A stretch of DNA of 64,000 bases from Amoebophrya sp. A120 (lineage: Eukaryota > Protista > Dinoflagellata), in NCBI GenBank assembly GCA_905178155.1, contig CAJINV010000004.1, positions 28,432 to 92,431 of the forward strand, written 5' to 3'. The notes below the pieces were generated by a model, which was given only the letters and a program-made list of their open reading frames with translations, made no database searches and was not told the DNA's origin. Shown here piece after piece: positions 33,601 to 42,600 of the stretch; positions within the stretch are counted from its first letter, which is position 1; the number at the start of each line of letters is the position of its first letter. The position numbers were made by a program, and so were the translations under genes.

Positions 33601-36600
33601 CAACCTGTCATGCGTGACTCACAAAACTCGTAGCTTTGTGTTGCAAAATCCCCAGCCTGGCTCTGGTGTGGGTACGTTTTTACTCAGGATAAAGGCTGGG
33701 CGTTGCCGGCAACGCGAACCAGGACCGCGGCGTCCGCGTGTTGGTGTCCCGCGAGGCGCCCACTCCGGCTAGCACCTGCAAGCAGGACGACCCCGACCTG
33801 GACAGCGGCACCGTTGAGGTGTGCGAAAACCTCAGGTACGGCCTCCAGGGAGAGGGCCCCTACCGATTTGCGAAACTAGCCGAGGTGCCGGTCGCGCAGA
33901 CCTTGCCGCCGGGGTTTGCCGACGGGGGCGCGGCGGGCGCGGTAGATACCACCGGGCACTACCAAAAGTACGAGGTGGTGGGAACCGGGTGGTGCAGCTG
34001 CGGAGGCGACCCGTGCGAGGATACCTATGAAACGAGTGCACTACGACTCCCGCTCCCCCTCAATTGTATGCCACAAACAGCAACACAAGCGTCGGCACGA
34101 GTTCCGGTTTTGCGCGACAAGTTCACCCACATTTGTAGTTTTGTTTTTTATTGAGCTGCCGGAACTTGCCCTGCAATTGCAAAAAGTGTCAAGGAAGAGG
34201 CAAGCGTCAAGTCGGAGGTCGAGTTGTGCACTCTTATAATGCCCCGGCGTCCCCGACAAACGGCGACTACATCGCGGGCAACGCGGATCGCGCGCAAGAC
34301 TACTGCCAAAGATTCTGCGACGAGGACCGGGGATGTCAGGCCTACATGCAACAGCGTGACATGCAACAGCGTGACATGCTTCCAGGAAACTGCCGCTTGT
34401 TCGGGTACGAGGACTACGAGGTAGACGGCGTCTATCCAGGAAAAAGCACCCATCCCCATCCAATTTGTCACGCAAAACATGCATAAGGTCGACTGTTTGT
34501 CATGCAAAAAATGGATGGGGATCATGGGTGTTTTTCCCTGGATAGCGTCGTCAGCATCATCACGCGGGGAGGCCTTGGCTACGGGGTCGGAAAAATTCCT
34601 GCCGGGTGGCGGTCCGGGGTCCCGTGCATGAAAAAGACGGGACACGCAGCGACCTCGGGGAAGCCGATCTACACAAATCAGGGCGACGCCTGGTGCAAGT
34701 GCAACTTGAAAAACCACAACCTGAACAAGAACGGGGCCGCAGGAGGCGTCCGCGTCAGTGCGACAAACCTCCCCTGCCCGGTACAAGGGTCCGAGGAGCA
34801 GTATGCATTGCAAATATAGTATCGCTCTCGTATAAATGCGAGTGCAGCTGCATCATGAGCATTACAGATCTGCTCTCTTACCTATACCTGTGAATCTACA
34901 TGACAACTTCCATCTTTCTTAAAGGAAAGATTTGTCATGCAATTCATTCCACTGCGATATCATATATTTGCAATTCATAAGCAAGACGGGAAATTGATTT
35001 TCTCCAGCTATGACAAAGGTCCCGACTGGTGCAAGACCCTGTGTGACAAGGACAAGGACTGTCGTGCCTACCAGCAGTCTATGGTGAACGCCGAAACGGC
35101 CGCTAACTGCAGGCTCTTCAACGCAGACGATGTCGATGGCGGCATCAACGCTGCCGACGATCTATCAAATGTAAAAATGTCTGGGTCTGGAAGATTCTGA
35201 CACTTGTCATGCACCTTCTGCATGAGCCGTGATGTCTGTGATGCATGCCCTAGCATCACAGATTTTTTGAGAGCTTCTTGATGCCTATTCCGCATGACAA
35301 ATGCCCTTTCCGCGTAGCAAAAATTGCATTCTCTTTGGTACTCATGCAATACAGATTTGTTTGGAATCCAAATGCAGCATCACAAATTGCATTCTTCCAG
35401 ACCCAGACATTTTTACATTTGATACGATCCGGAGTTGTACAACGATCTGAGCGAGGTGCAGAAGATATCGAAGGGAAAAATCCCCCCTCCCCATATCAAA
35501 ACGAAATTTCTGATGCTGGATCTGTGTGCACAAATCAGCTTTGTATTGCAGGAGGGCACTGCGGCCAGATCCCCAGGCTATGTAGGGGCGTATCGGTCTA
35601 GTTGATCAGCATGGCAAACGGCTGCGCTTTAGGCCCAGCAGCATGACAAACCGCTTCCCTAATGGGCGCGAAGCTTTTGCCCTTGTCTTCTTGCAAGACA
35701 AATGTGATTTGTGACCTCAAATCACCAATACAAATTTTCGGAAACATGCCTTTTCGATATGGGGAGGGGGAGTTTTTCCTTTCAATAGAAGACGTGGAAT
35801 AGTTACGCTTGCAACCGGAAGGTCGAGAGACCGGCGGTGATTGGGGAGGCAAAGATCGACTGCACGGGCACGAAAGGGGGCAAATTTGTGACGATCCAGC
35901 TGCCGCAACCCATCCTTGCCACGGGGGTGGACGACGCAACCGCGACCACGCGCAGCCTCGATCTCACCGAAGTAAACATTTTTGGCCGCGTATGGGAATG
36001 TCAGGATTAAAATCGTCAAAGTTGAAATAGTTTGTCATGTATAAAATCGATACGAGTCGGAATCCCAATTTTCAAGCAGCGCATGACAAATTTCGGCACC
36101 GTCTAGATCCAGTTTGTCATGCTGTTTAGGGACAGGCGTGGTCTTTTGTCATGCTACTTTAGCAGCTCTACCGCAGAACCGGGGAGGGGATCCTTGACCT
36201 GTGGCGCCGGGAGCGGGTGTCCACTACATGATGATGATCCCAAACAGGCTGGCAGTCGGCCTCAGTCACTTACACTTGCCATTCCTGCAAGAGAGGCAGT
36301 TCATGCCTTGCAATTTATGCATGAGAAATTCTTTTAACTTTGTCGATTTCAATCCTGACGCTTCCATACCGCGTGGCTGGCGCTGGCGTAACGGCCGCAC
36401 GAGGTGGTGGACACGGGAACGACAACGAGGACGTCGTGCCCGTTATTTCGCAGGAGATTGATCTGACCCCCACGGTATCAAATGTAAAAATGTCTGGGTC
36501 TGGAAGATTTCTCGATTTGTCATGCATATTTTCCACTACCCATGATGTCTGTGATGCATGCCGTAGCATCACTAATTTTTATTTTTCGAGCGCTTTGTGA

Positions 36601-39600
36601 TGCCTCTACAGCATAAGAAATGACCTCTCCGCGTAGCACAAACTGGAGTCCTCTTGCTGGTCATGCAATACAAATTCACCGGTGGAAACGTTACCGTGCT
36701 CTTGGAAATACCGAACTTGACCAGGACATGCAGCCACTCTAACGGTTCCACTCGGGTCCGACCCCCGTTAGAGCTTGACCCTTTTCCCCCGAGGTCCTAC
36801 CTGAGGTAGTGGTCGTAAAGGGGATATAGTGGTTGAGGGGTAAATAAGGTCACGCAATACAAATTTTCTCAGAATCCAGAGACAGCATCACAAGTTTTGA
36901 ATGTTCCAGACCCAGACATTGTTACACTTAATACACGGGCGACGCCTCGCGGGTTTTGGCCAGCAGCACGACCGAGTACCACCCCCACGTGCCCGCGCTT
37001 TCGCAACCCCGCAACGTGATCGACGGGCTGGCGTTTGTGACCTTTTTCCAAACGCGACCGATATGGCGTTCTCAAACGTTACGTTCTCAACTGTCACATG
37101 AAGTTGTAATGCAAGGATGGCAACAGTGAAAAGATGAAATTGTCATGCTTGCAGCTCTCGCATCAACACAAATTTCGAACGGATTATAGTGCTGTTTAGC
37201 CCTTCCAGGATTTGTCATTCGAAGTAACCTTGGTCGTCTGGCGGCTTATGGTAATTAATTTTGCATGACAAATCACGTAACGGTTGAGAGTGTAACGCTT
37301 GAGAATCCCATAACCGAGCCCCTGTCCCTGGGTGCAGGTCGACATCAGCGGGCCGCGCAATCAGCCCCGTAGTGTGACGCGAGTGGTGCTCATCTCGCAG
37401 ATGAAAAACGCGCGCATACTATCCTACGTAAAAACATCCCCACCCCAGAGTTGTCATGCAGATTTGCAAGCACAGGAGCATTTGTAATGCGCATCCCCAT
37501 GAGAGAGGCACTTCCCATCGTGTTTTGAAACTTGTAATGCTGTAAACAGGATAAGGAGACGGAAGTGCTATGCGGATTCCCTTGCTATGCTGCACTACAG
37601 TACAGCCACAGCCCGCAACTTGTCATGCGTGACCCCCAAAAGTTCTAAGTTTGTGTTGCGAAATCCCCATTTTGACTCTGGGGTTGGGACGTTTTTACTC
37701 AGGATACACACGCCAGATGCTGCTCCCCACCTCGGGATACGACGAAGACTGGTTCGACACCGCGAACGCGGTGGAGCAAACCAGCTGCAGGCTATGACAC
37801 TGCACAACTCCCCCTCCCCCTCATTTGTCATGCAAAACACCAAACCCAGGCTGTGGCTCTTGGCGCTGCTTGCATGACAAACTCCGGAAGTAGCCCAAGC
37901 AGTGCTACTTACACTTCTGGGCAAATTTGTCATGCAAAACCGGCATTCTTACTGACGCTTGTATTTTTGCCGTTCATGCTACACAAGTGAGGGACGAGGG
38001 GGAGTTGTGCACTCTTATACAGGCAGGCAAGCTGCCAGGAGGACACTGGCGTGGAAGTCTGGGTGCGCAACAGTCCGTTGACAACGGCGAATCAGGTGAA
38101 TGCAAGCCCAATTCTATCACAGTGAAAAATGCCCCCCACCCCTGAACTTGCAAGAATTTGTGATGCGAAGTTTCCAAATGAAAGCTTTTTGTCATGCATG
38201 AAAGGAGTGCGAATCTTTCTGATGCAGATTCCAGTCGTGTTTCGCATCGCTTGCGTGACAAGTACCGCTCTTGCTGGGATCTTTTGCAACACAAATTTTT
38301 GCTATTCACAATCGGAAATCTGTGATGCTGATACACGCAAGAGGGCGAATGTTTCATTTGGAAAGATTTGCAATACAAATGCTTTCAAGTTCGGGGGTGG
38401 GGGCATTTTTCATTGTAATAAATTCCGGGACAAGATGAACTACAAGGAAATACGAACTGCGGGCAGGTAGCGCAAGAGGCGTCGTTGTGCGAGCGGGTAC
38501 ACTTTGGCGACCGAAAACGGTTTCGGTTTCTGGGAAAGGGCGTCGCGGGCTTCGACGACGAGGACCAACACAGTCTCATGTATATGGCGTTCTCAACTGA
38601 TTTGTCATGCAAAATTTTCATAAGTCGCCAGAAGATTAAGGTGCTTCGCATGACAATTTTTTCGAAGGGCTACACAGCATCTAAACGCGTTGCAAATTTG
38701 TGACGCGAGACTCGCAAGCCTGCCCCTTTCCATATTGCTGGTCTTGCATCACAAGGAATTCGTGTAACCATTGAGAATGTAACGCTTGAGAGCGCCACAA
38801 TGTACGGCGACAGCGTCGGGGAGCTCACCGTTGATTGCAAGCGGCACCAGGCGGAAAAGACCCGCGCCGTTGTGGTGGTCCTGCCCCCTGGAGAGCAGGG
38901 CGAGGACCGTGTCCTTAGCTTGCTGGAGCTGCAGGTGTTCGGTTTGCACGAGGATGGGGCGGGCGGGGCGCCGACCCCACCGCAGCCCTCCCCTGGTCCC
39001 TCGCCGACCACTGCGGCACCGCCCGCACCGGGCCCGCGTACCACCGTGGAGGGAGTCTATCTGCTTCCGACGGGGCCATACATGCTGCCGAACACACAGG
39101 AGTCCGCCCCAACGGACGACGATCCCTTCGCAAGGTGTCGCGTGGATCCGCCACAAGACCGCTTCGTGGGACGACACCCCGAATGCGCGGACCCGCCGCT
39201 GGGCAACGCGGCAAAGCACCAGGCCGTCGAAGCCGGCAGGTGGTGGAAGCAGCGTTTTGGGAGCCCGGCGTACAACAGCCGCGACTCGCCACGTTACCCC
39301 GCGAACTTGGTGTTTCTCGTGTCGCCGCTGCGCCGCGCCATGGAGGCGTGCGCGATGTTTATCAGAGGCGCTGCGCCCTTTCCCGGCGCGGAAACCGGCA
39401 CCGCGGTGTCTCTCCTAATCGAGGAAGGCTACGGAGCGGACCTCGGGAAAAATCCATTGGACGAGATATCAAACGCAAATATGTCTGGGTTTGGAAGAGT
39501 GGAAGGCTCGTCATGCATATTTTGAATGACCCATGATGTGGTCTGTGATGCATGCCCTAGCATCACAGATTTAGCCGAGAGGGCTTTGCGATGCCTCTAC

Positions 39601-42600
39601 AACCGCATGAGATGAAATGCCCTCTCCGCGTAGCGCAAATATACAACTGGTTTCCTCTTGCTGGTCATGCATGCGTCCGTAGCCATTTTGGCTCAAGACT
39701 TCTTGTCTTGTGGCCCTTTTCCCACTTTAGAGACGGGGCCGCACCCCCGTGAGATCAATTCGTCCGGACTCACCGTGGAGATCAACCCCCGTGAGATCCA
39801 AGATCCGTAGAGGCACTCTGTAACAGGCATCAGGTGCGGCTGGTGAACCTTTTGACTCACACGTAGATTGTAGATTGTTTCTCTAAAAGAAAAATCAAAG
39901 CAAAAAAAATGAGCACACACTTGCCCTCCATCCGAAGCGCGCACGTGCGCAATGAAGCTTCGATGGTCCCAGCGGGCATAACGCCCGGTCTTACTCGTTA
40001 CTCCCTTCATCTGCCCTCACCAGCCGTCCCCGATGGCGTTCGATTGTGGGGCCCTTGATCCCCACGTAGAAGCTCTTCGCGGGTTTCTTCTTGCCGGGTG
40101 GAAGACGGTGCGCGTCGGTTTTTTTTTGGCGGTCTGGGAGTTCCGTGTAGGTCTTTGTTCCTAGGGGCGCTTGTCGACGCCCTGCGGCGGAGCGGGCGAT
40201 CGGGAGGACTCGACGCTACTTGTGGACGCCATCTCCGAGCTGTCGATAGTAGAGGAGTTCTGCCGCACATCTCCGCGTCACGAGGATGCCGCGCCCACTA
40301 GCGGATCGCCCTGCTGCGCTGGAGATCAGGGACTTTTTATTTATTGTTTTTCGTTTGTCTCACACTCTCACACACTCGAATACTTATGAAAAGATCATAG
40401 TACCAGACCCATATTTCCTTTTTTTCTTCGTTTGAGTTTGTCGCCCCTCCTAATCCTTTGGTCTGTGTTGTGGCAGCGGATTGTCCTCTGACCCTTACGT
40501 AGCCTTATGGCAACCCCTTTCCATATGATTGAACTCAGGTTTTGTGTGGTAGCTGCGCTGGCAGCGCGTTTGTGCGGCTCTCTACTCCTGCGAGGTGCGA
40601 CGTTTTCAATGCGGCTGGGCTTTGCGGATCCAAACTGCGCGGAGGTGGTGGTGGCGATGGCGGGTTGATTACGGTGCGGGAATTCGGGTCGCCAGCCCCG
40701 GGTCTCACAGAGTACTGAACGGTGCTTACCAGCTGGATAGACGAGTGAGGGGTGATTACTCGTAGGGGAGTTGTTTATGGCTCGCGGTCGTCTTTCTGTC
40801 GTCCTGGCGTCGTTCGTGGGGGTGTGGCGCGGGGGTGGAGCGATCCTCGACGAGCGGTGCGGTTGCGGCTTTGTCGCGTCGAGCGGAGCGGAGCGTCGCT
40901 GTGTCTCCTCGGCATCGTCTCTTCGTGGCCTGTCGTGCGTAGTCCTAGGTGGGGTCCCTATCCCGGCCATTGCAATAGGGCTTTTTGGTGGACTGCTGGA
41001 GACCCCAGTCCAGTCGCATCGCGACGTTATTTTTCAGCTGCAGGAGACCCCAGCTATCCCTTTGCTCTGCCCAAGTCCCTCGTCTTTGTCTGTTCGTCGT
41101 GTTTTGCCTGGTTTACCGCTGGAAACGATGCCGTGCTTTTGGAATTCCGGTTTCGACCAGGACATGCAGCCACTCTAACGGTTTCACTCGGGTCCGACCC
41201 CCGTTAGAGCTTGACCCCATCCCCCCGAGGTCCTACCTGAGGTAGTGGTCGTAAAGGGGGTATAGTGGTTGAGGGGTAAATAAGGTCATGCAATACAATT
41301 TTTAGTTTAGAAGCTCCCAGACCCGGACATATTATTTGCAATCCATACGAGAGCGACAATAAGTTCCCCGAAATTTACCTGGTCCCACAGCTTCGGGAGG
41401 TGCCAAACAACGTGGACAACCACGGGACGGCGGTTGCTTTGTATTAAAAGGAAAAATTATCCCCCCTCCCCATATCGAAACAAAGTTTCTGATGCTGGAT
41501 TTCCGTACATAAATCAGATTTGTCTTGCTGGAGAGGACTGCAGGCATATGCCAAGCCTCAGTCGAGAGCAGGGTTTGACGTAGGCGCCTAGCATGGCGAA
41601 TGTGTATTCTCTAAGCCCAACAGCATCACAGACCACCTGGAAAGTGCGGGGCGCTCTCTGGACTTGCCTTCTTGCAAGACAGACAGGATTTGAGGTCACA
41701 AATGCGCGTCACAAATTTTCAGACGGTGGATATGTTTTCAATATGGGTAGGGGGGATTTTTCCTTACGATACTTTGTGGGAGAAGTTCAAGGAAGAGGTT
41801 ATGAAAGCCTCAGGTTGGAAATCCTCAAAGTGGAAATAATTTGTTATGCAAAAAAACGACTCCAGTTGAAGCGGCATTTGTAGTCGGCGCATGTCAAATT
41901 TCCCGGGCACTTAAAGCACGTCTGTCATGCAGGTTAACGCAAGGGGGTGCCCTTCTGTCGTGCTACGCAGCGCTCCAATTCTTCACCCCTAGCAGGACAA
42001 TAGTCGGCCTCCATTGCGTTCTCTGCAATACAGTCTTTTTTGCGTCGCATTTCATGCATCACAAATCATTTCCACTTTGAGCATTTCCAACCTGAGGCTT
42101 GCATAGAGGTGATCCGCGTGCAGCTGCTGAACCCGCTACTGAATGAGGCCAACGGCGGGACGGCGGACCGCCGGATTTCGGAGTGGTTCGACAAGGTGCA
42201 ATTATTGAAGCGTCAGGTTTGAAATCGTCAAAGTTGAAATAGTTTGTCACGCATGAAACGGATACCAGTTAGACCTACAGTCTGTAGTCGGCGCATGACA
42301 AATTTTCCCGGTCCTGGAAGCGGGTCTGTCATGCGGTTTAGGGCAAAAGGGCTGCCTTCTGTCATGCTAGTCAGCAGTCCAACTTTTACCAGGACTATAA
42401 TCTGCTTCCCATGCGTCCTCTGCAATAGAGTCACTTCTTGTATCGCATTTTATGCATGACAAACAAGGTCCGAGCACGGGGACAGAGTCCCCGTGCGGCG
42501 ACCTTCCGGCATTTGTCTGGGACGAGTTCGGGGGTTGTCGTGGTGGCGCACAGGGCGGGCAGGCCCCTGCAGCTCGGTGCCTCTGTGTGTCCTGCGCTCC

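What the first reader, a model, noticed from the sequence alone, without database searches (positions are those of the whole stretch)
36476..41347. Spliced-leader-capped, site-specific retro-element that targets introner introns (a hyperparasite of introners)
Seen: two separate family-A introners carry the same foreign element at the identical internal site (GGTCATGCA). Both copies share the 3' end (...GGTTGAGGGGTAAATAA), but their TSDs differ in length (9 and 18 bp) and their 5' ends differ (1.6 kb vs 171 bp). The long copy starts with four extra nucleotides (TGCG) and then a perfect DinoSL 22-mer, and it lacks poly(A) and any convincing ORF. Established: variable TSDs, 5' truncation and a fixed 3' end are hallmarks of target-primed reverse transcription, and the SL is added only at the RNA level, so this copy passed through a trans-spliced RNA. 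Inference: a non-autonomous element is mobilised by a sequence-specific non-LTR enzyme (R2/CRE-like logic) whose safe-harbour target is a multicopy introner, so the passenger is spliced out together with its host. I know of no description of this, but could not search the literature.
Basis: partly seen in the sequence, partly recalled or inferred. Interest (0 to 1): 0.95.

Follow-up and report, generated by a model that had tools for sequence, protein, structure and literature searches.

The report
Retrotransposon that homes into introner introns
A family of LINE-type retrotransposons in a parasitic dinoflagellate (probably Amoebophrya) inserts at one exact nucleotide inside a transposon-derived intron present in thousands of copies, so each new insertion is spliced out of the host gene's RNA with the intron.

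Summary

- **Two copies in the window.** Both sit at the same site of two family-A introners. One is 171 nt with an 18-bp target-site duplication (TSD). The other is 1,612 nt with a 9-bp TSD, beginning TGCG plus a perfect 22-nt DinoSL.
- **Site specificity.** Genome-wide, 19 of 20 matches to the 3' end are followed by GGTCATGCAATACA. 5' truncation points and TSDs (4-18 bp) vary.
- **Independent insertions.** Four full-length 1.6-kb copies are 96.5-99% identical, while their host introners are only 65-86% identical.
- **Target abundance.** The target occurs about 3,500 times in the genome.
- **Autonomous partner.** I found it at the same site. It is 12.4 kb, starts with spliced-leader (SL) relics, and has two ORF1 paralogs. 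Its 1,994-aa ORF2 has an APE-like endonuclease and a LINE-type reverse transcriptase. It shares its 3' tail with the 1.6-kb element.
- **Enzyme type.** It is R1/Tx1-like (APE), not R2/CRE-like.
- **Splicing.** A transcript contig joins 39460 to 41347, so intron plus passenger is spliced out exactly.
- **Wider pattern.** A metagenome contig from another genome shows the same arrangement. Related SL-headed elements occupy other fixed sites in other introner families.
- **Closest precedent.** Tx1L inserting into Tx1D. I found no description of an introner target.

The first-stage scan also noted SL-headed retrocopies inside introners elsewhere in this genome.

The parts
36476..36937 (+). Family-A introner 1, an intron of the + strand host gene, carrying the short copy
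   Evidence: TIR cores are at 36490 (+) and 36919 (-). The direct repeat CACGG lies at both ends. A transcript contig resumes at 36938. The 36475-to-36938 joint itself was not listed.
36659..36676 (+). Left copy of the 18-bp TSD (GGTCATGCAATACAAATT). The right copy is at 36848-36865 with one mismatch.
36677..36847 (+). 5'-truncated 171-nt copy, consisting of the 3' tail only
   Evidence: 90.8% identical to the tail of the long copy. Its diagnostic bases group it with the LINE-type subfamilies.
39461..41346 (+). Family-A introner 2 plus passenger: a 1,886-nt intron with direct repeat ACGAGA
   Evidence: A 3,590-nt contig of run X1 (depth 17) joins 39460 to 41347. TIR cores are at 39481 (+) and 41330 (-).
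39663..39671 (+). Left copy of the 9-bp TSD GGTCATGCA. The right copy is at 41284-41292.
39672..39675 (+). Four extra bases (TGCG) at the 5' junction, from neither target nor SL
   Evidence: The empty target continues ATACA.
39676..39697 (+). Complete 22-nt DinoSL
   Evidence: Exact match, unique in the window
39698..39992 (+). 5' module shared at 77-96% identity with six other SL-headed elements that have other 3' ends and other targets
39993..40941 (+). Middle part, non-coding. It partly matches one relative at 74% identity (query positions 545-1020).
40942..41283 (+). 3' tail shared with the autonomous LINE (87% identity over about 340 nt)
41149..41283 (+). Most conserved terminal 135 nt, with predicted hairpins. 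This is the probable recognition signal for the reverse transcriptase.
   Evidence: The alignment of 13 copies is nearly invariant. In the consensus structure 97.9% of cells are paired, against 40-52% in slid controls, and 5 pairs show compensatory change. The single-sequence folding z-score is only -0.48.

Best explanation
This is a target-specific, APE-type non-LTR retrotransposon lineage, together with a 1.6-kb non-coding element that borrows its 3' tail.

Proposed mechanism:
1. The element-encoded endonuclease nicks the bottom strand at one position, CTTGCT^GGTCATGCAATACA. This site lies inside a TIR introner family with about 3,500 copies.
2. The reverse transcriptase recognises the conserved, structured 3' terminal ~135 nt of the RNA, which has no poly(A). 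It primes cDNA synthesis from the nick.
3. Second-strand cleavage is imprecise, 4-18 bp downstream. This gives variable TSDs.
4. Incomplete reverse transcription gives 5' truncated copies.
5. Full-length RNAs carry the dinoflagellate spliced leader, so they are trans-spliced pol II transcripts.
6. The target is itself an intron, so the insertion is removed from the host mRNA by normal splicing and costs the host gene little.

Shown: the fixed site, independent insertions, the autonomous partner with APE-like and RT domains, SL at the 5' ends, the shared and conserved 3' tail, and exact splicing of the loaded intron.

Inferred: which strand is nicked first; recognition of the tail by the RT; mobilisation of the 1.6-kb element in trans; and the idea that elements are transcribed as part of the host pre-mRNA and gain their 5' end by SL trans-splicing at the relic's AG.
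For: - **Same junction.** 19 of 20 matches to the 3' end have the same 3' junction. 5' ends fall at query positions 1, 44, 60, 81, 94, 106 and 130 of the 175-nt probe. Further 5' junctions have TSDs of 9, 11, 15, 17 and 18 bp.
- **Independent insertions.** The four full-length copies are 96.5-99.2% identical to each other. Their host introner halves are 65-86% identical.
- **Target abundance.** The 18-mer target has 3,513 matches at up to 1 mismatch. The reversed control has 0.
- **Autonomous copy.** It lies at G000 C4:6547184-6559570 and has a 16-bp TSD at the same site.
- **Reverse transcriptase.** ORF2 (1,994 aa) gives RVT_1 at 18.6 bits. Its paralogs (E 1e-143 to 1e-123) give 31-49 bits, above Pfam's cut-off. 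A profile of the six finds LINE-1 ORF2p at 8e-10 and R2 at 1.8e-8 in the PDB.
- **Endonuclease.** The model's best Foldseek matches are all of one fold: TRAS1 endonuclease (3e-4), then Tdp2, L1 EN and APE1. The nearest ESM Atlas clusters all carry RVT_1 plus Exo_endo_phos.
- **SL at the 5' end.** The window copy has it complete, three other full-length copies have it in part, and the autonomous copy has it in tandem.
- **Splicing.** A transcript contig joins 39460 to 41347.
- **Orientation.** The element is sense to the host gene.
- **Second genome.** It shows the same site with a new truncation point.
Against: - No experiment shows cleavage or retrotransposition.
- The endonuclease model is poor (pLDDT 52, TM about 0.36). 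Its assignment rests on consistent but weak matches and on motifs.
- Only one intact autonomous copy was found, and its 3' tail is 87%, not 100%, identical to that of the recently active 1.6-kb element. The real driver of the recent copies could be another, unseen or lost, copy.
- Raw RNA reads gave no coverage. No SL-headed transcript, 3' end or expression level was seen.
- Run X1 is only guessed to be RNA, although its six intron-skipping joints argue for it.
- One match (C5:4309334) lacks the expected 3' flank. One copy (C1:5593943) lacks the left half of its introner.
Confidence: 0.85

Rival explanations
1. One ancestral insertion into one introner was then spread by transposition of the loaded introner, or by gene conversion among introners. 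The shared site would be inherited rather than targeted.
For: Introners of this family are mobile and numerous. Loaded introners keep their TIRs, so they could move in principle.
Against: - 5' junctions, truncation points and TSD lengths differ among copies.
- The elements are 96.5-99% identical inside introners that are only 65-86% identical.
- Two different lineages, coding LINE fragments and the non-coding 1.6-kb element, occupy the same site.
Confidence: 0.03
2. The insertions are ordinary processed retrocopies of a cellular SL-trans-spliced RNA. A non-specific LINE put them into introners because introners are abundant, AT-rich or open. No dedicated element would exist.
For: - Near-complete SL sequences occur at least 49 times in the genome with many different downstream sequences.
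- First-stage notes list other SL-headed retrocopies in introners, some with poly(A).
- The 5' module is shared with elements that have other tails.
Against: - The insertions are at one nucleotide, not merely in introners.
- There is no poly(A).
- The 3' 340 nt is the 3' UTR of an RT-encoding element at the same site.
- 5'-truncated copies of that coding element are there too.
Confidence: 0.05
3. The SL-headed 5' module was not made by trans-splicing of the element's own transcript. During reverse transcription the enzyme jumped from the tail-bearing template to another SL-capped RNA, making a chimera that later became a propagating element. This concerns the origin of the 5' end only and is compatible with the main explanation.
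For: - The element is a mosaic. Its 5' 300 nt is shared at 77-96% identity with six elements that have other 3' ends. Its tail is shared with the LINE, whose own 5' end is different.
- One copy starts at query position 657, next to the end (position 668) of the part shared with the 570-bp element at C1:5983216.
Against: - Four independent copies carry the whole mosaic at 96.5-99% identity. The mosaic is therefore itself transcribed and copied, and it regains an SL each round: one copy has all 22 nt, the others 12-13 nt.
- The autonomous element also starts with SL relics.
Confidence: 0.15

Closest known systems
Tx1L / Tx2L of Xenopus laevis (Tx1 clade, APE-type LINEs that insert into the DNA transposons Tx1D / Tx2D)
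   Same: An APE-type LINE with a fixed target inside another, multicopy transposon. It forms composite elements. The case is cited in PMC6719617 and PMC4640811.
   Different: - Here the target transposon is an introner, so the target is an intron of expressed genes and the insertion is spliced out.
- The 5' end carries a spliced leader.
- TSDs are variable.
- Clade membership by RT phylogeny was not tested.
R1 and TRAS/SART (R1 clade, APE-type, specific for 28S rDNA or telomeric repeats)
   Same: An APE-like endonuclease N-terminal to the RT. A precise first nick in a multicopy target. A 3' UTR signal rather than dependence on poly(A). TRAS1 endonuclease is the best structural match.
   Different: Different target class. 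ORF2 is much larger (1,994 aa). There are two ORF1 paralogs. The sequence is extremely isolated: apart from three Amoebophrya sp. AT5.2 proteins, nothing among 1.84 billion representatives scores better than E 2.5e-11.
R2, and CRE/SLACS/CZAR/NeSL (restriction-like endonuclease LINEs specific for rDNA or spliced-leader genes)
   Same: The safe-harbour logic is the same. Like R2, the element is probably co-transcribed with its host unit and then freed by RNA processing (inference). SLACS, CRE and NeSL also have a link with spliced leaders.
   Different: - The endonuclease here is APE-like and N-terminal, not restriction-like and C-terminal.
- Those elements insert into SL genes. This one carries the SL because its RNA is trans-spliced.
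DinoSL-tagged retrogenes of dinoflagellates (Slamovits and Keeling 2008; PMC6050394, PMC5585692, PMC12014239)
   Same: SL relics at the 5' end of DNA copies, including tandem relics in the autonomous copy. This is proof of passage through a trans-spliced RNA.
   Different: Those are copies of cellular mRNAs at scattered places. This is a self-propagating element with its own enzyme, a fixed site and no poly(A).
Introners of Amoebophrya A120 classed as retrotransposon-derived, or carrying retrotransposon ORFs between DNA-type TIRs (Gozashti et al. 2025, PMC12130899)
   Same: Probably the same genome, and the same kind of composite: retroelement sequence between introner TIRs, in several near-identical copies.
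   Different: That paper treats the composites as unusual introner families. It does not mention nesting: the word 'nested' occurs 0 times. Here the composite is shown to be a retroelement inserted by TPRT into an older TIR introner. Their example is Copia/Gypsy-like and I did not examine it.

Membership tests
Non-LTR (LINE) retrotransposon | Reverse transcriptase of the non-LTR type | tested here: met
   ORF2 gives RVT_1 at 18.6 bits, below the cut-off. It is homologous (E 1e-143) to paralogs that score 31-49 bits, above the cut-off. A profile of the six finds LINE-1 ORF2p at 8e-10 and R2 at 1.8e-8.
Non-LTR (LINE) retrotransposon | Hallmarks of target-primed reverse transcription: fixed 3' end, variable 5' truncation, TSDs, extra bases at the 5' junction | tested here: met
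Non-LTR (LINE) retrotransposon | No long terminal repeats | tested here: met
   The 340-nt tail occurs once in the 18.6-kb region around the autonomous copy, and the 5' end is unrelated to it.
APE-type LINE (as opposed to RLE-type) | Exo-endo-phosphatase fold endonuclease N-terminal to the RT | tested here: inconclusive
   The model has pLDDT 52, yet all best Foldseek matches are of this fold, with TRAS1 EN first at 3e-4. Conserved N, E, Y, GDLN and PD motifs are present. Atlas neighbours all carry RVT_1 plus Exo_endo_phos. There is no Pfam match.
Target-specific LINE | Independent insertions at the same nucleotide of a repeated target | tested here: met
   19 of 20 in this genome plus one in another genome.
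R2 / CRE group | Restriction-like endonuclease C-terminal to the RT, with no APE domain | tested here: not met
   An APE-like domain lies at residues ~480-720, ahead of the RT at ~940-1130. A C-terminal Cys/His cluster exists, but no restriction-like domain was sought or seen.
Tx1 or R1 clade | Placement within the clade in an RT phylogeny with reference elements | not testable with these tools
   No reference set of LINE clades was on hand. Sequence searches give only distant RT matches.
LINE with RNase H domain (I, R1, Tad or ingi-like architecture) | RNase H fold after the RT | tested here: inconclusive
   The D, E, D and H...EAD motifs are invariant in six paralogs. The model is unusable at pLDDT 45. 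The only PDB matches are RNase H1, but at E 0.35-1.6.
SINE-like non-autonomous partner of a LINE | 3' tail shared with the partner LINE | tested here: met
   87% identity over 340 nt. The terminal 135 nt is nearly invariant.
SINE-like non-autonomous partner of a LINE | Head derived from a pol III gene (tRNA, 7SL, 5S, snRNA) | tested here: not met
   There is no Rfam match in 39400-41400. The head is a spliced leader plus a module shared with other SL-headed elements.
Processed retrogene | Poly(A) tail and scattered insertion sites | tested here: not met
   The element ends in GGGGTAAATAA and has a fixed site.
Introner (the host element) | Repeated element with TIRs and direct repeats that is removed as an intron | tested here: met
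   TIRs. Direct repeat ACGAGA and an exact joint in a transcript contig. The description matches PMC7789003.

The most novel reading that the evidence does not exclude
The window shows one member of a whole guild. Several lineages of spliced-leader-headed retroelements may each be specialised on a fixed site in a different introner family. Under this reading the elements need no promoter: they ride in host pre-mRNAs and gain a capped 5' end by SL trans-splicing. They also do little harm, because the spliceosome removes them with the introner. Introners would then be a genomic niche for a second layer of parasites. This would also explain the 'introners with retrotransposon ORFs between TIRs' reported for Amoebophrya A120.
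Probability: 0.45. Interest if true: 0.85.

Novelty: new variant of a known kind. Interest (0 to 1): 0.75.

Why it matters
Target-specific LINEs are known for rDNA, telomeres, small RNA genes, microsatellites and, in Xenopus, a DNA transposon. An intron-generating transposon as target is a new niche, and a neat one.

- The target is present in thousands of copies inside expressed genes.
- Insertion there is neutralised by splicing.
- Transcription comes free with the host gene.
- The spliced leader at the 5' end gives direct DNA evidence that a retrotransposon RNA is trans-spliced.

The result also bears on how introner families are classified. Composites of TIR introner and nested retroelement can be mistaken for retrotransposon-derived introners.

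A precise endonuclease with a 14-18 bp target, and an RT that recognises a 135-nt RNA tail, are also of practical interest, as with R2-based insertion tools.

Tried and rejected
- **Single ancestral insertion.** Rejected from the junctions and from the identity contrast between elements and hosts.
- **R2/CRE-type enzyme.** Rejected, because the endonuclease is APE-like.
- **Internal-deletion derivative.** I asked whether the 1.6-kb element is a deleted form of the LINE. Only the last 340 nt match.
- **Known RNA family or tRNA-like head.** No Rfam match.
- **ORFs of the 1.6-kb element.** No family.
- **ORF1a and ORF1b.** No Pfam or Atlas match.
- **Word-index protein search of ORF2.** Nothing found.
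- **RNase H model.** Too poor to use, so I ran no fold search on it.
- **Paralogous LINE families.** I tried to find the targets of L051-L053. Their shared downstream sequence occurs only twice in the genome, so it belongs to the elements, and their ends lie beyond the DNA I held.
- **Fetching more flanks.** The 3' ends of the family-B elements are therefore not defined.
- **Raw RNA runs X10-X12.** Only 95 reads of X10 were laid, all on the repeated introner end at about 36476-36509, and none of X11 or X12. They gave no coverage of the host gene or of either element, so they are no test of expression.
- **Host exon.** The exon at 38800-39459 has no Pfam family.
- **Joined exons.** Exons were joined only inside a script, to count stop codons.

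Full report
**What is in the window**

The region lies in a + strand gene whose exons are separated by many short repeated introns.

Two of these introns are introners with ATGTCTGGGTCTGGAAG-type terminal inverted repeats: 36476-36937 and 39461-41346.

Each carries a foreign insert at the same internal position, directly before GGTCATGCAATACA.

- **Short insert.** It spans 36677-36847 (171 nt) and has an 18-bp TSD.
- **Long insert.** It spans 39672-41283 and has a 9-bp TSD. It starts with TGCG and then a perfect 22-nt DinoSL at 39676-39697.
- Both end in ...GGTTGAGGGGTAAATAA without poly(A).
- The long insert has no ORF above 191 aa, and none of its ORFs has a Pfam family.

**Is the site specific?**

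I searched the window's own genome (115.5 Mb, 401 contigs) with the last 175 nt. There were 20 matches, and 19 are followed by GGTCATGCAATACA or a one-base variant of it.

Their 5' ends differ. The 5' junctions show TSDs from 4 to 18 bp that all begin at the same base, in some cases with extra bases. A fixed 3' junction with a variable 5' junction is the signature of target-primed reverse transcription: a precise first nick and an imprecise second one.

Four full-length 1.6-kb copies exist. They are 96.5-99.2% identical to one another, while the introner halves around them are only 65-86% identical. They were therefore inserted separately, and recently, into introners that had already diverged. 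This rejects spread of one loaded introner.

The 18-mer target occurs 3,513 times at up to one mismatch, against 0 for the reversed control. About 0.6% of targets are occupied.

**The autonomous partner**

Some copies with the same tail diverge upstream of the last 340 nt. One of them, at contig 4 positions 6547184-6559570, is 12.4 kb long.

- It lies after ...GCTCATGCAATACAGA and is followed by the same 16 bases.
- It begins with two tandem SL relics, TTGGCTCAAG-cagagtagtc-ATTTTGGCTCAAG-cagagtagtc.
- It holds three long ORFs.
  - The first two (710 and 657 aa) are paralogs of each other at 35% identity (E 1e-109). They are found nowhere else in the genome.
  - The third is 1,994 aa.

*Reverse transcriptase.* On its own the third ORF gives only a weak RVT_1 match. 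It is, however, clearly homologous (E 1e-143 to 1e-123) to five other ~2,000-aa ORFs in the genome that pass Pfam's RVT_1 cut-off. A profile of the six finds LINE-1 ORF2p and R2 proteins among solved structures.

*Endonuclease.* The region ahead of the RT has conserved N, E, Y, GDLN and PD motifs. Its model is of low confidence (pLDDT 52). Even so, every best Foldseek match has the exo-endo-phosphatase fold, led by the endonuclease of the telomere-specific LINE TRAS1. The language-model search finds only clusters with RVT_1 plus Exo_endo_phos.

*RNase H.* An RNase H-like motif set follows the RT, but I could not confirm it.

*Truncated coding copies.* 5'-truncated copies that still carry the end of ORF2 sit at the same site elsewhere, with TSDs of 9, 11 and 17 bp.

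The enzyme is thus APE-type, as in the R1 and Tx1 clades, not the restriction-like type of R2 or CRE.

**The 1.6-kb element is a mosaic**

- Only its last 340 nt match the LINE, at 87% identity.
- Its first 300 nt after the SL match six other SL-headed elements at 77-96% identity. Those elements have other 3' ends.
- The terminal 135 nt is nearly invariant among subfamilies that are otherwise 77-90% alike.
- That stretch folds into hairpins with five compensatory pairs. In the consensus structure 97.9% of cells are paired, against 40-52% when partners are slid. A single-sequence fold is not exceptional (z = -0.48).

I take this stretch to be the signal that the reverse transcriptase recognises, which would let the non-coding element be copied in trans. 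This step is inferred.

**The spliced leader**

- The window copy has all 22 nt.
- The other three full-length copies start at (A)TTTTGGCTCAAG, directly after a 15-18 bp TSD that ends in AAATT. The 5' junction there probably formed by microhomology within the U-run.
- The autonomous copy and the related elements also start inside the SL.

The SL is added only to RNA, so these DNA copies came from trans-spliced transcripts.

The element is in sense orientation in its host gene. The exons defined by RNA joints give one open frame of 403 codons on the + strand. I joined the exons only in a script, to count stops.

A promoter-less cycle is therefore plausible: transcription within the host pre-mRNA, then SL trans-splicing at the relic's AG. 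It is not shown.

**Splicing**

In run X1, a 3,590-nt contig at depth 17 joins 39460 directly to 47 bases... correction: to 41347, skipping 1,886 nt. The ambiguity is the 6-nt direct repeat ACGAGA. Five further introns of the same gene are also joined in a second contig.

X1 is only guessed to be RNA by its record, but intron-skipping contigs show that it is. The loaded introner is thus removed exactly.

The raw RNA runs gave no coverage of this gene, so expression of the element itself remains untested.

**Beyond this genome and this family**

*A second genome.* A metagenome contig, JACKZZ010024323.1, holds a family-A introner with a copy truncated at a new point and a 17-bp TSD at the same site. 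Its flanking exon matches this genome at only 79% identity, and it has an extra introner. It therefore comes from another genome. The element tail is nevertheless 97.5% identical.

*Other sites in other introners.* The six other elements with the shared 5' module all lie in introners.
- Two lie after GTGTACRCAAATCCAGCATC. This 20-mer has 2,514 matches at up to two mismatches, against 0 for the control.
- Two lie after GATTTGYGACCTCAAATCAGCAA in the same second introner family. All four have different 5' ends.
- One, of 570 bp, has the TSD TTTCATGCAT in a third family.

This suggests a guild of introner-specific elements. Their 3' ends lay outside the DNA I could fetch.

**Organism**

- Assembly size (115.5 Mb), largest contig (16.5 Mb) and introner structure fit Amoebophrya sp. 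A120 as described in PMC7789003.
- The only close relatives of ORF2 among 1.84 billion representative proteins are three proteins of Amoebophrya sp. AT5.2, at 31-33% identity.

The identification is an inference.

**Comparison with what is known**

Target-specific LINEs are well known, and targets listed in the literature include transposons (PMC4640811). The classical case is Tx1L in Tx1D (PMC6719617). DinoSL relics in retrogenes are also known.

In six full-text searches I found no report of a retroelement that targets introners, or of an SL-headed LINE in dinoflagellates.

[quoted passage not shown] It also reports puzzling elements with retrotransposon ORFs between DNA-type TIRs in near-identical copies, and does not mention nesting. 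The nesting shown here is a simple explanation for at least some such composites. I did not examine their example.

**Verdict**

This is a real, well-supported feature: a new variant of the target-specific LINE, with a new target class and a new way of being harmless. It is probably one of several such lineages in this genome.

Noticed in passing
L034 (C3:5235126), L037 (C1:1316977), L036 (C3:7717801), L040 (C8:1230225). The same introner family is in the window at about 41440-41780 and 35466-35798.: Other SL-headed elements share the 5' module and sit at two other fixed sites of a second introner family (TIR GGAAAAATCCCCCCTCCCCATAT). Each site has two independent insertions with different 5' ends. 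The 20-mer of one site has 2,514 genome matches at up to two mismatches.
   Followed up: partly
L032 (C1:5983216-5983785): A 570-bp SL-headed element with TSD TTTCATGCAT lies inside a third introner family. It equals the first ~670 nt of the 1.6-kb element minus an internal part, with a different short 3' end.
   Followed up: partly
whole genome: The 19-mer GTAGCCATTTTGGCTCAAG occurs at least 49 times, followed by many different sequences, and several of these recur 3-7 times. The genome paper reports a single complete DinoSL coding sequence. Most of these 49 are probably retro-insertions. AAG followed by GTTGAGCAAATTCC (3 copies) might be the SL RNA gene.
   Followed up: no
L062:6311-8440 and L047:316-2286 (C4:6547313-6551885): The autonomous element has two tandem ORF1-like genes that are 35% identical paralogs. 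They have no relative elsewhere in the genome, no Pfam family and no Atlas neighbour.
   Followed up: partly
L062:6185-6230: The autonomous copy starts with a tandem duplication of a 23-nt unit, a partial SL plus CAGAGTAGTC. It looks like relics of repeated rounds of trans-splicing and retrotransposition.
   Followed up: no
window 36476-41347: Two of the ~20 occupied introners in 115 Mb lie 2.5 kb apart in one gene, and they come from different subfamilies (90.8% identity). With 20 insertions spread uniformly, a pair this close has a chance of roughly 2%. Local reinsertion or a favoured gene is possible.
   Followed up: no
L063 (metagenome contig JACKZZ010024323.1): The element tail is 97.5% identical to this genome's copies, while the neighbouring exon is only 79% identical to its counterpart at C10:2177612. 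This points to strong constraint on the tail or to recent transfer between strains.
   Followed up: partly
L020 (C5:4309334) and L049 (C1:5593943): Two odd copies. One has the usual 5' flank but an unrelated 3' flank. The other, about 350 nt long, has a degenerate SL relic, lies next to exon-like sequence and has only the right part of an introner. Rearrangement or target deletion at insertion is possible.
   Followed up: no
L051-L055, L057 (C1:5843548, C11:958334, C5:6706951, C1:4728506, C16:1275570, C1:5003926): At least three further families of ~2,000-aa APE+RT ORFs are about 30% identical to the one studied, all with open frames. Their ends and targets are unknown.
   Followed up: partly
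window, throughout (for example 36030-36160, 37130-37270, 37800-37930): The motif TTGTCATGC and its complement GCATGACAA recur several times in every introner of every family. The LINE target GGTCATGCA and the TSD TTTCATGCAT resemble it.
   Followed up: no
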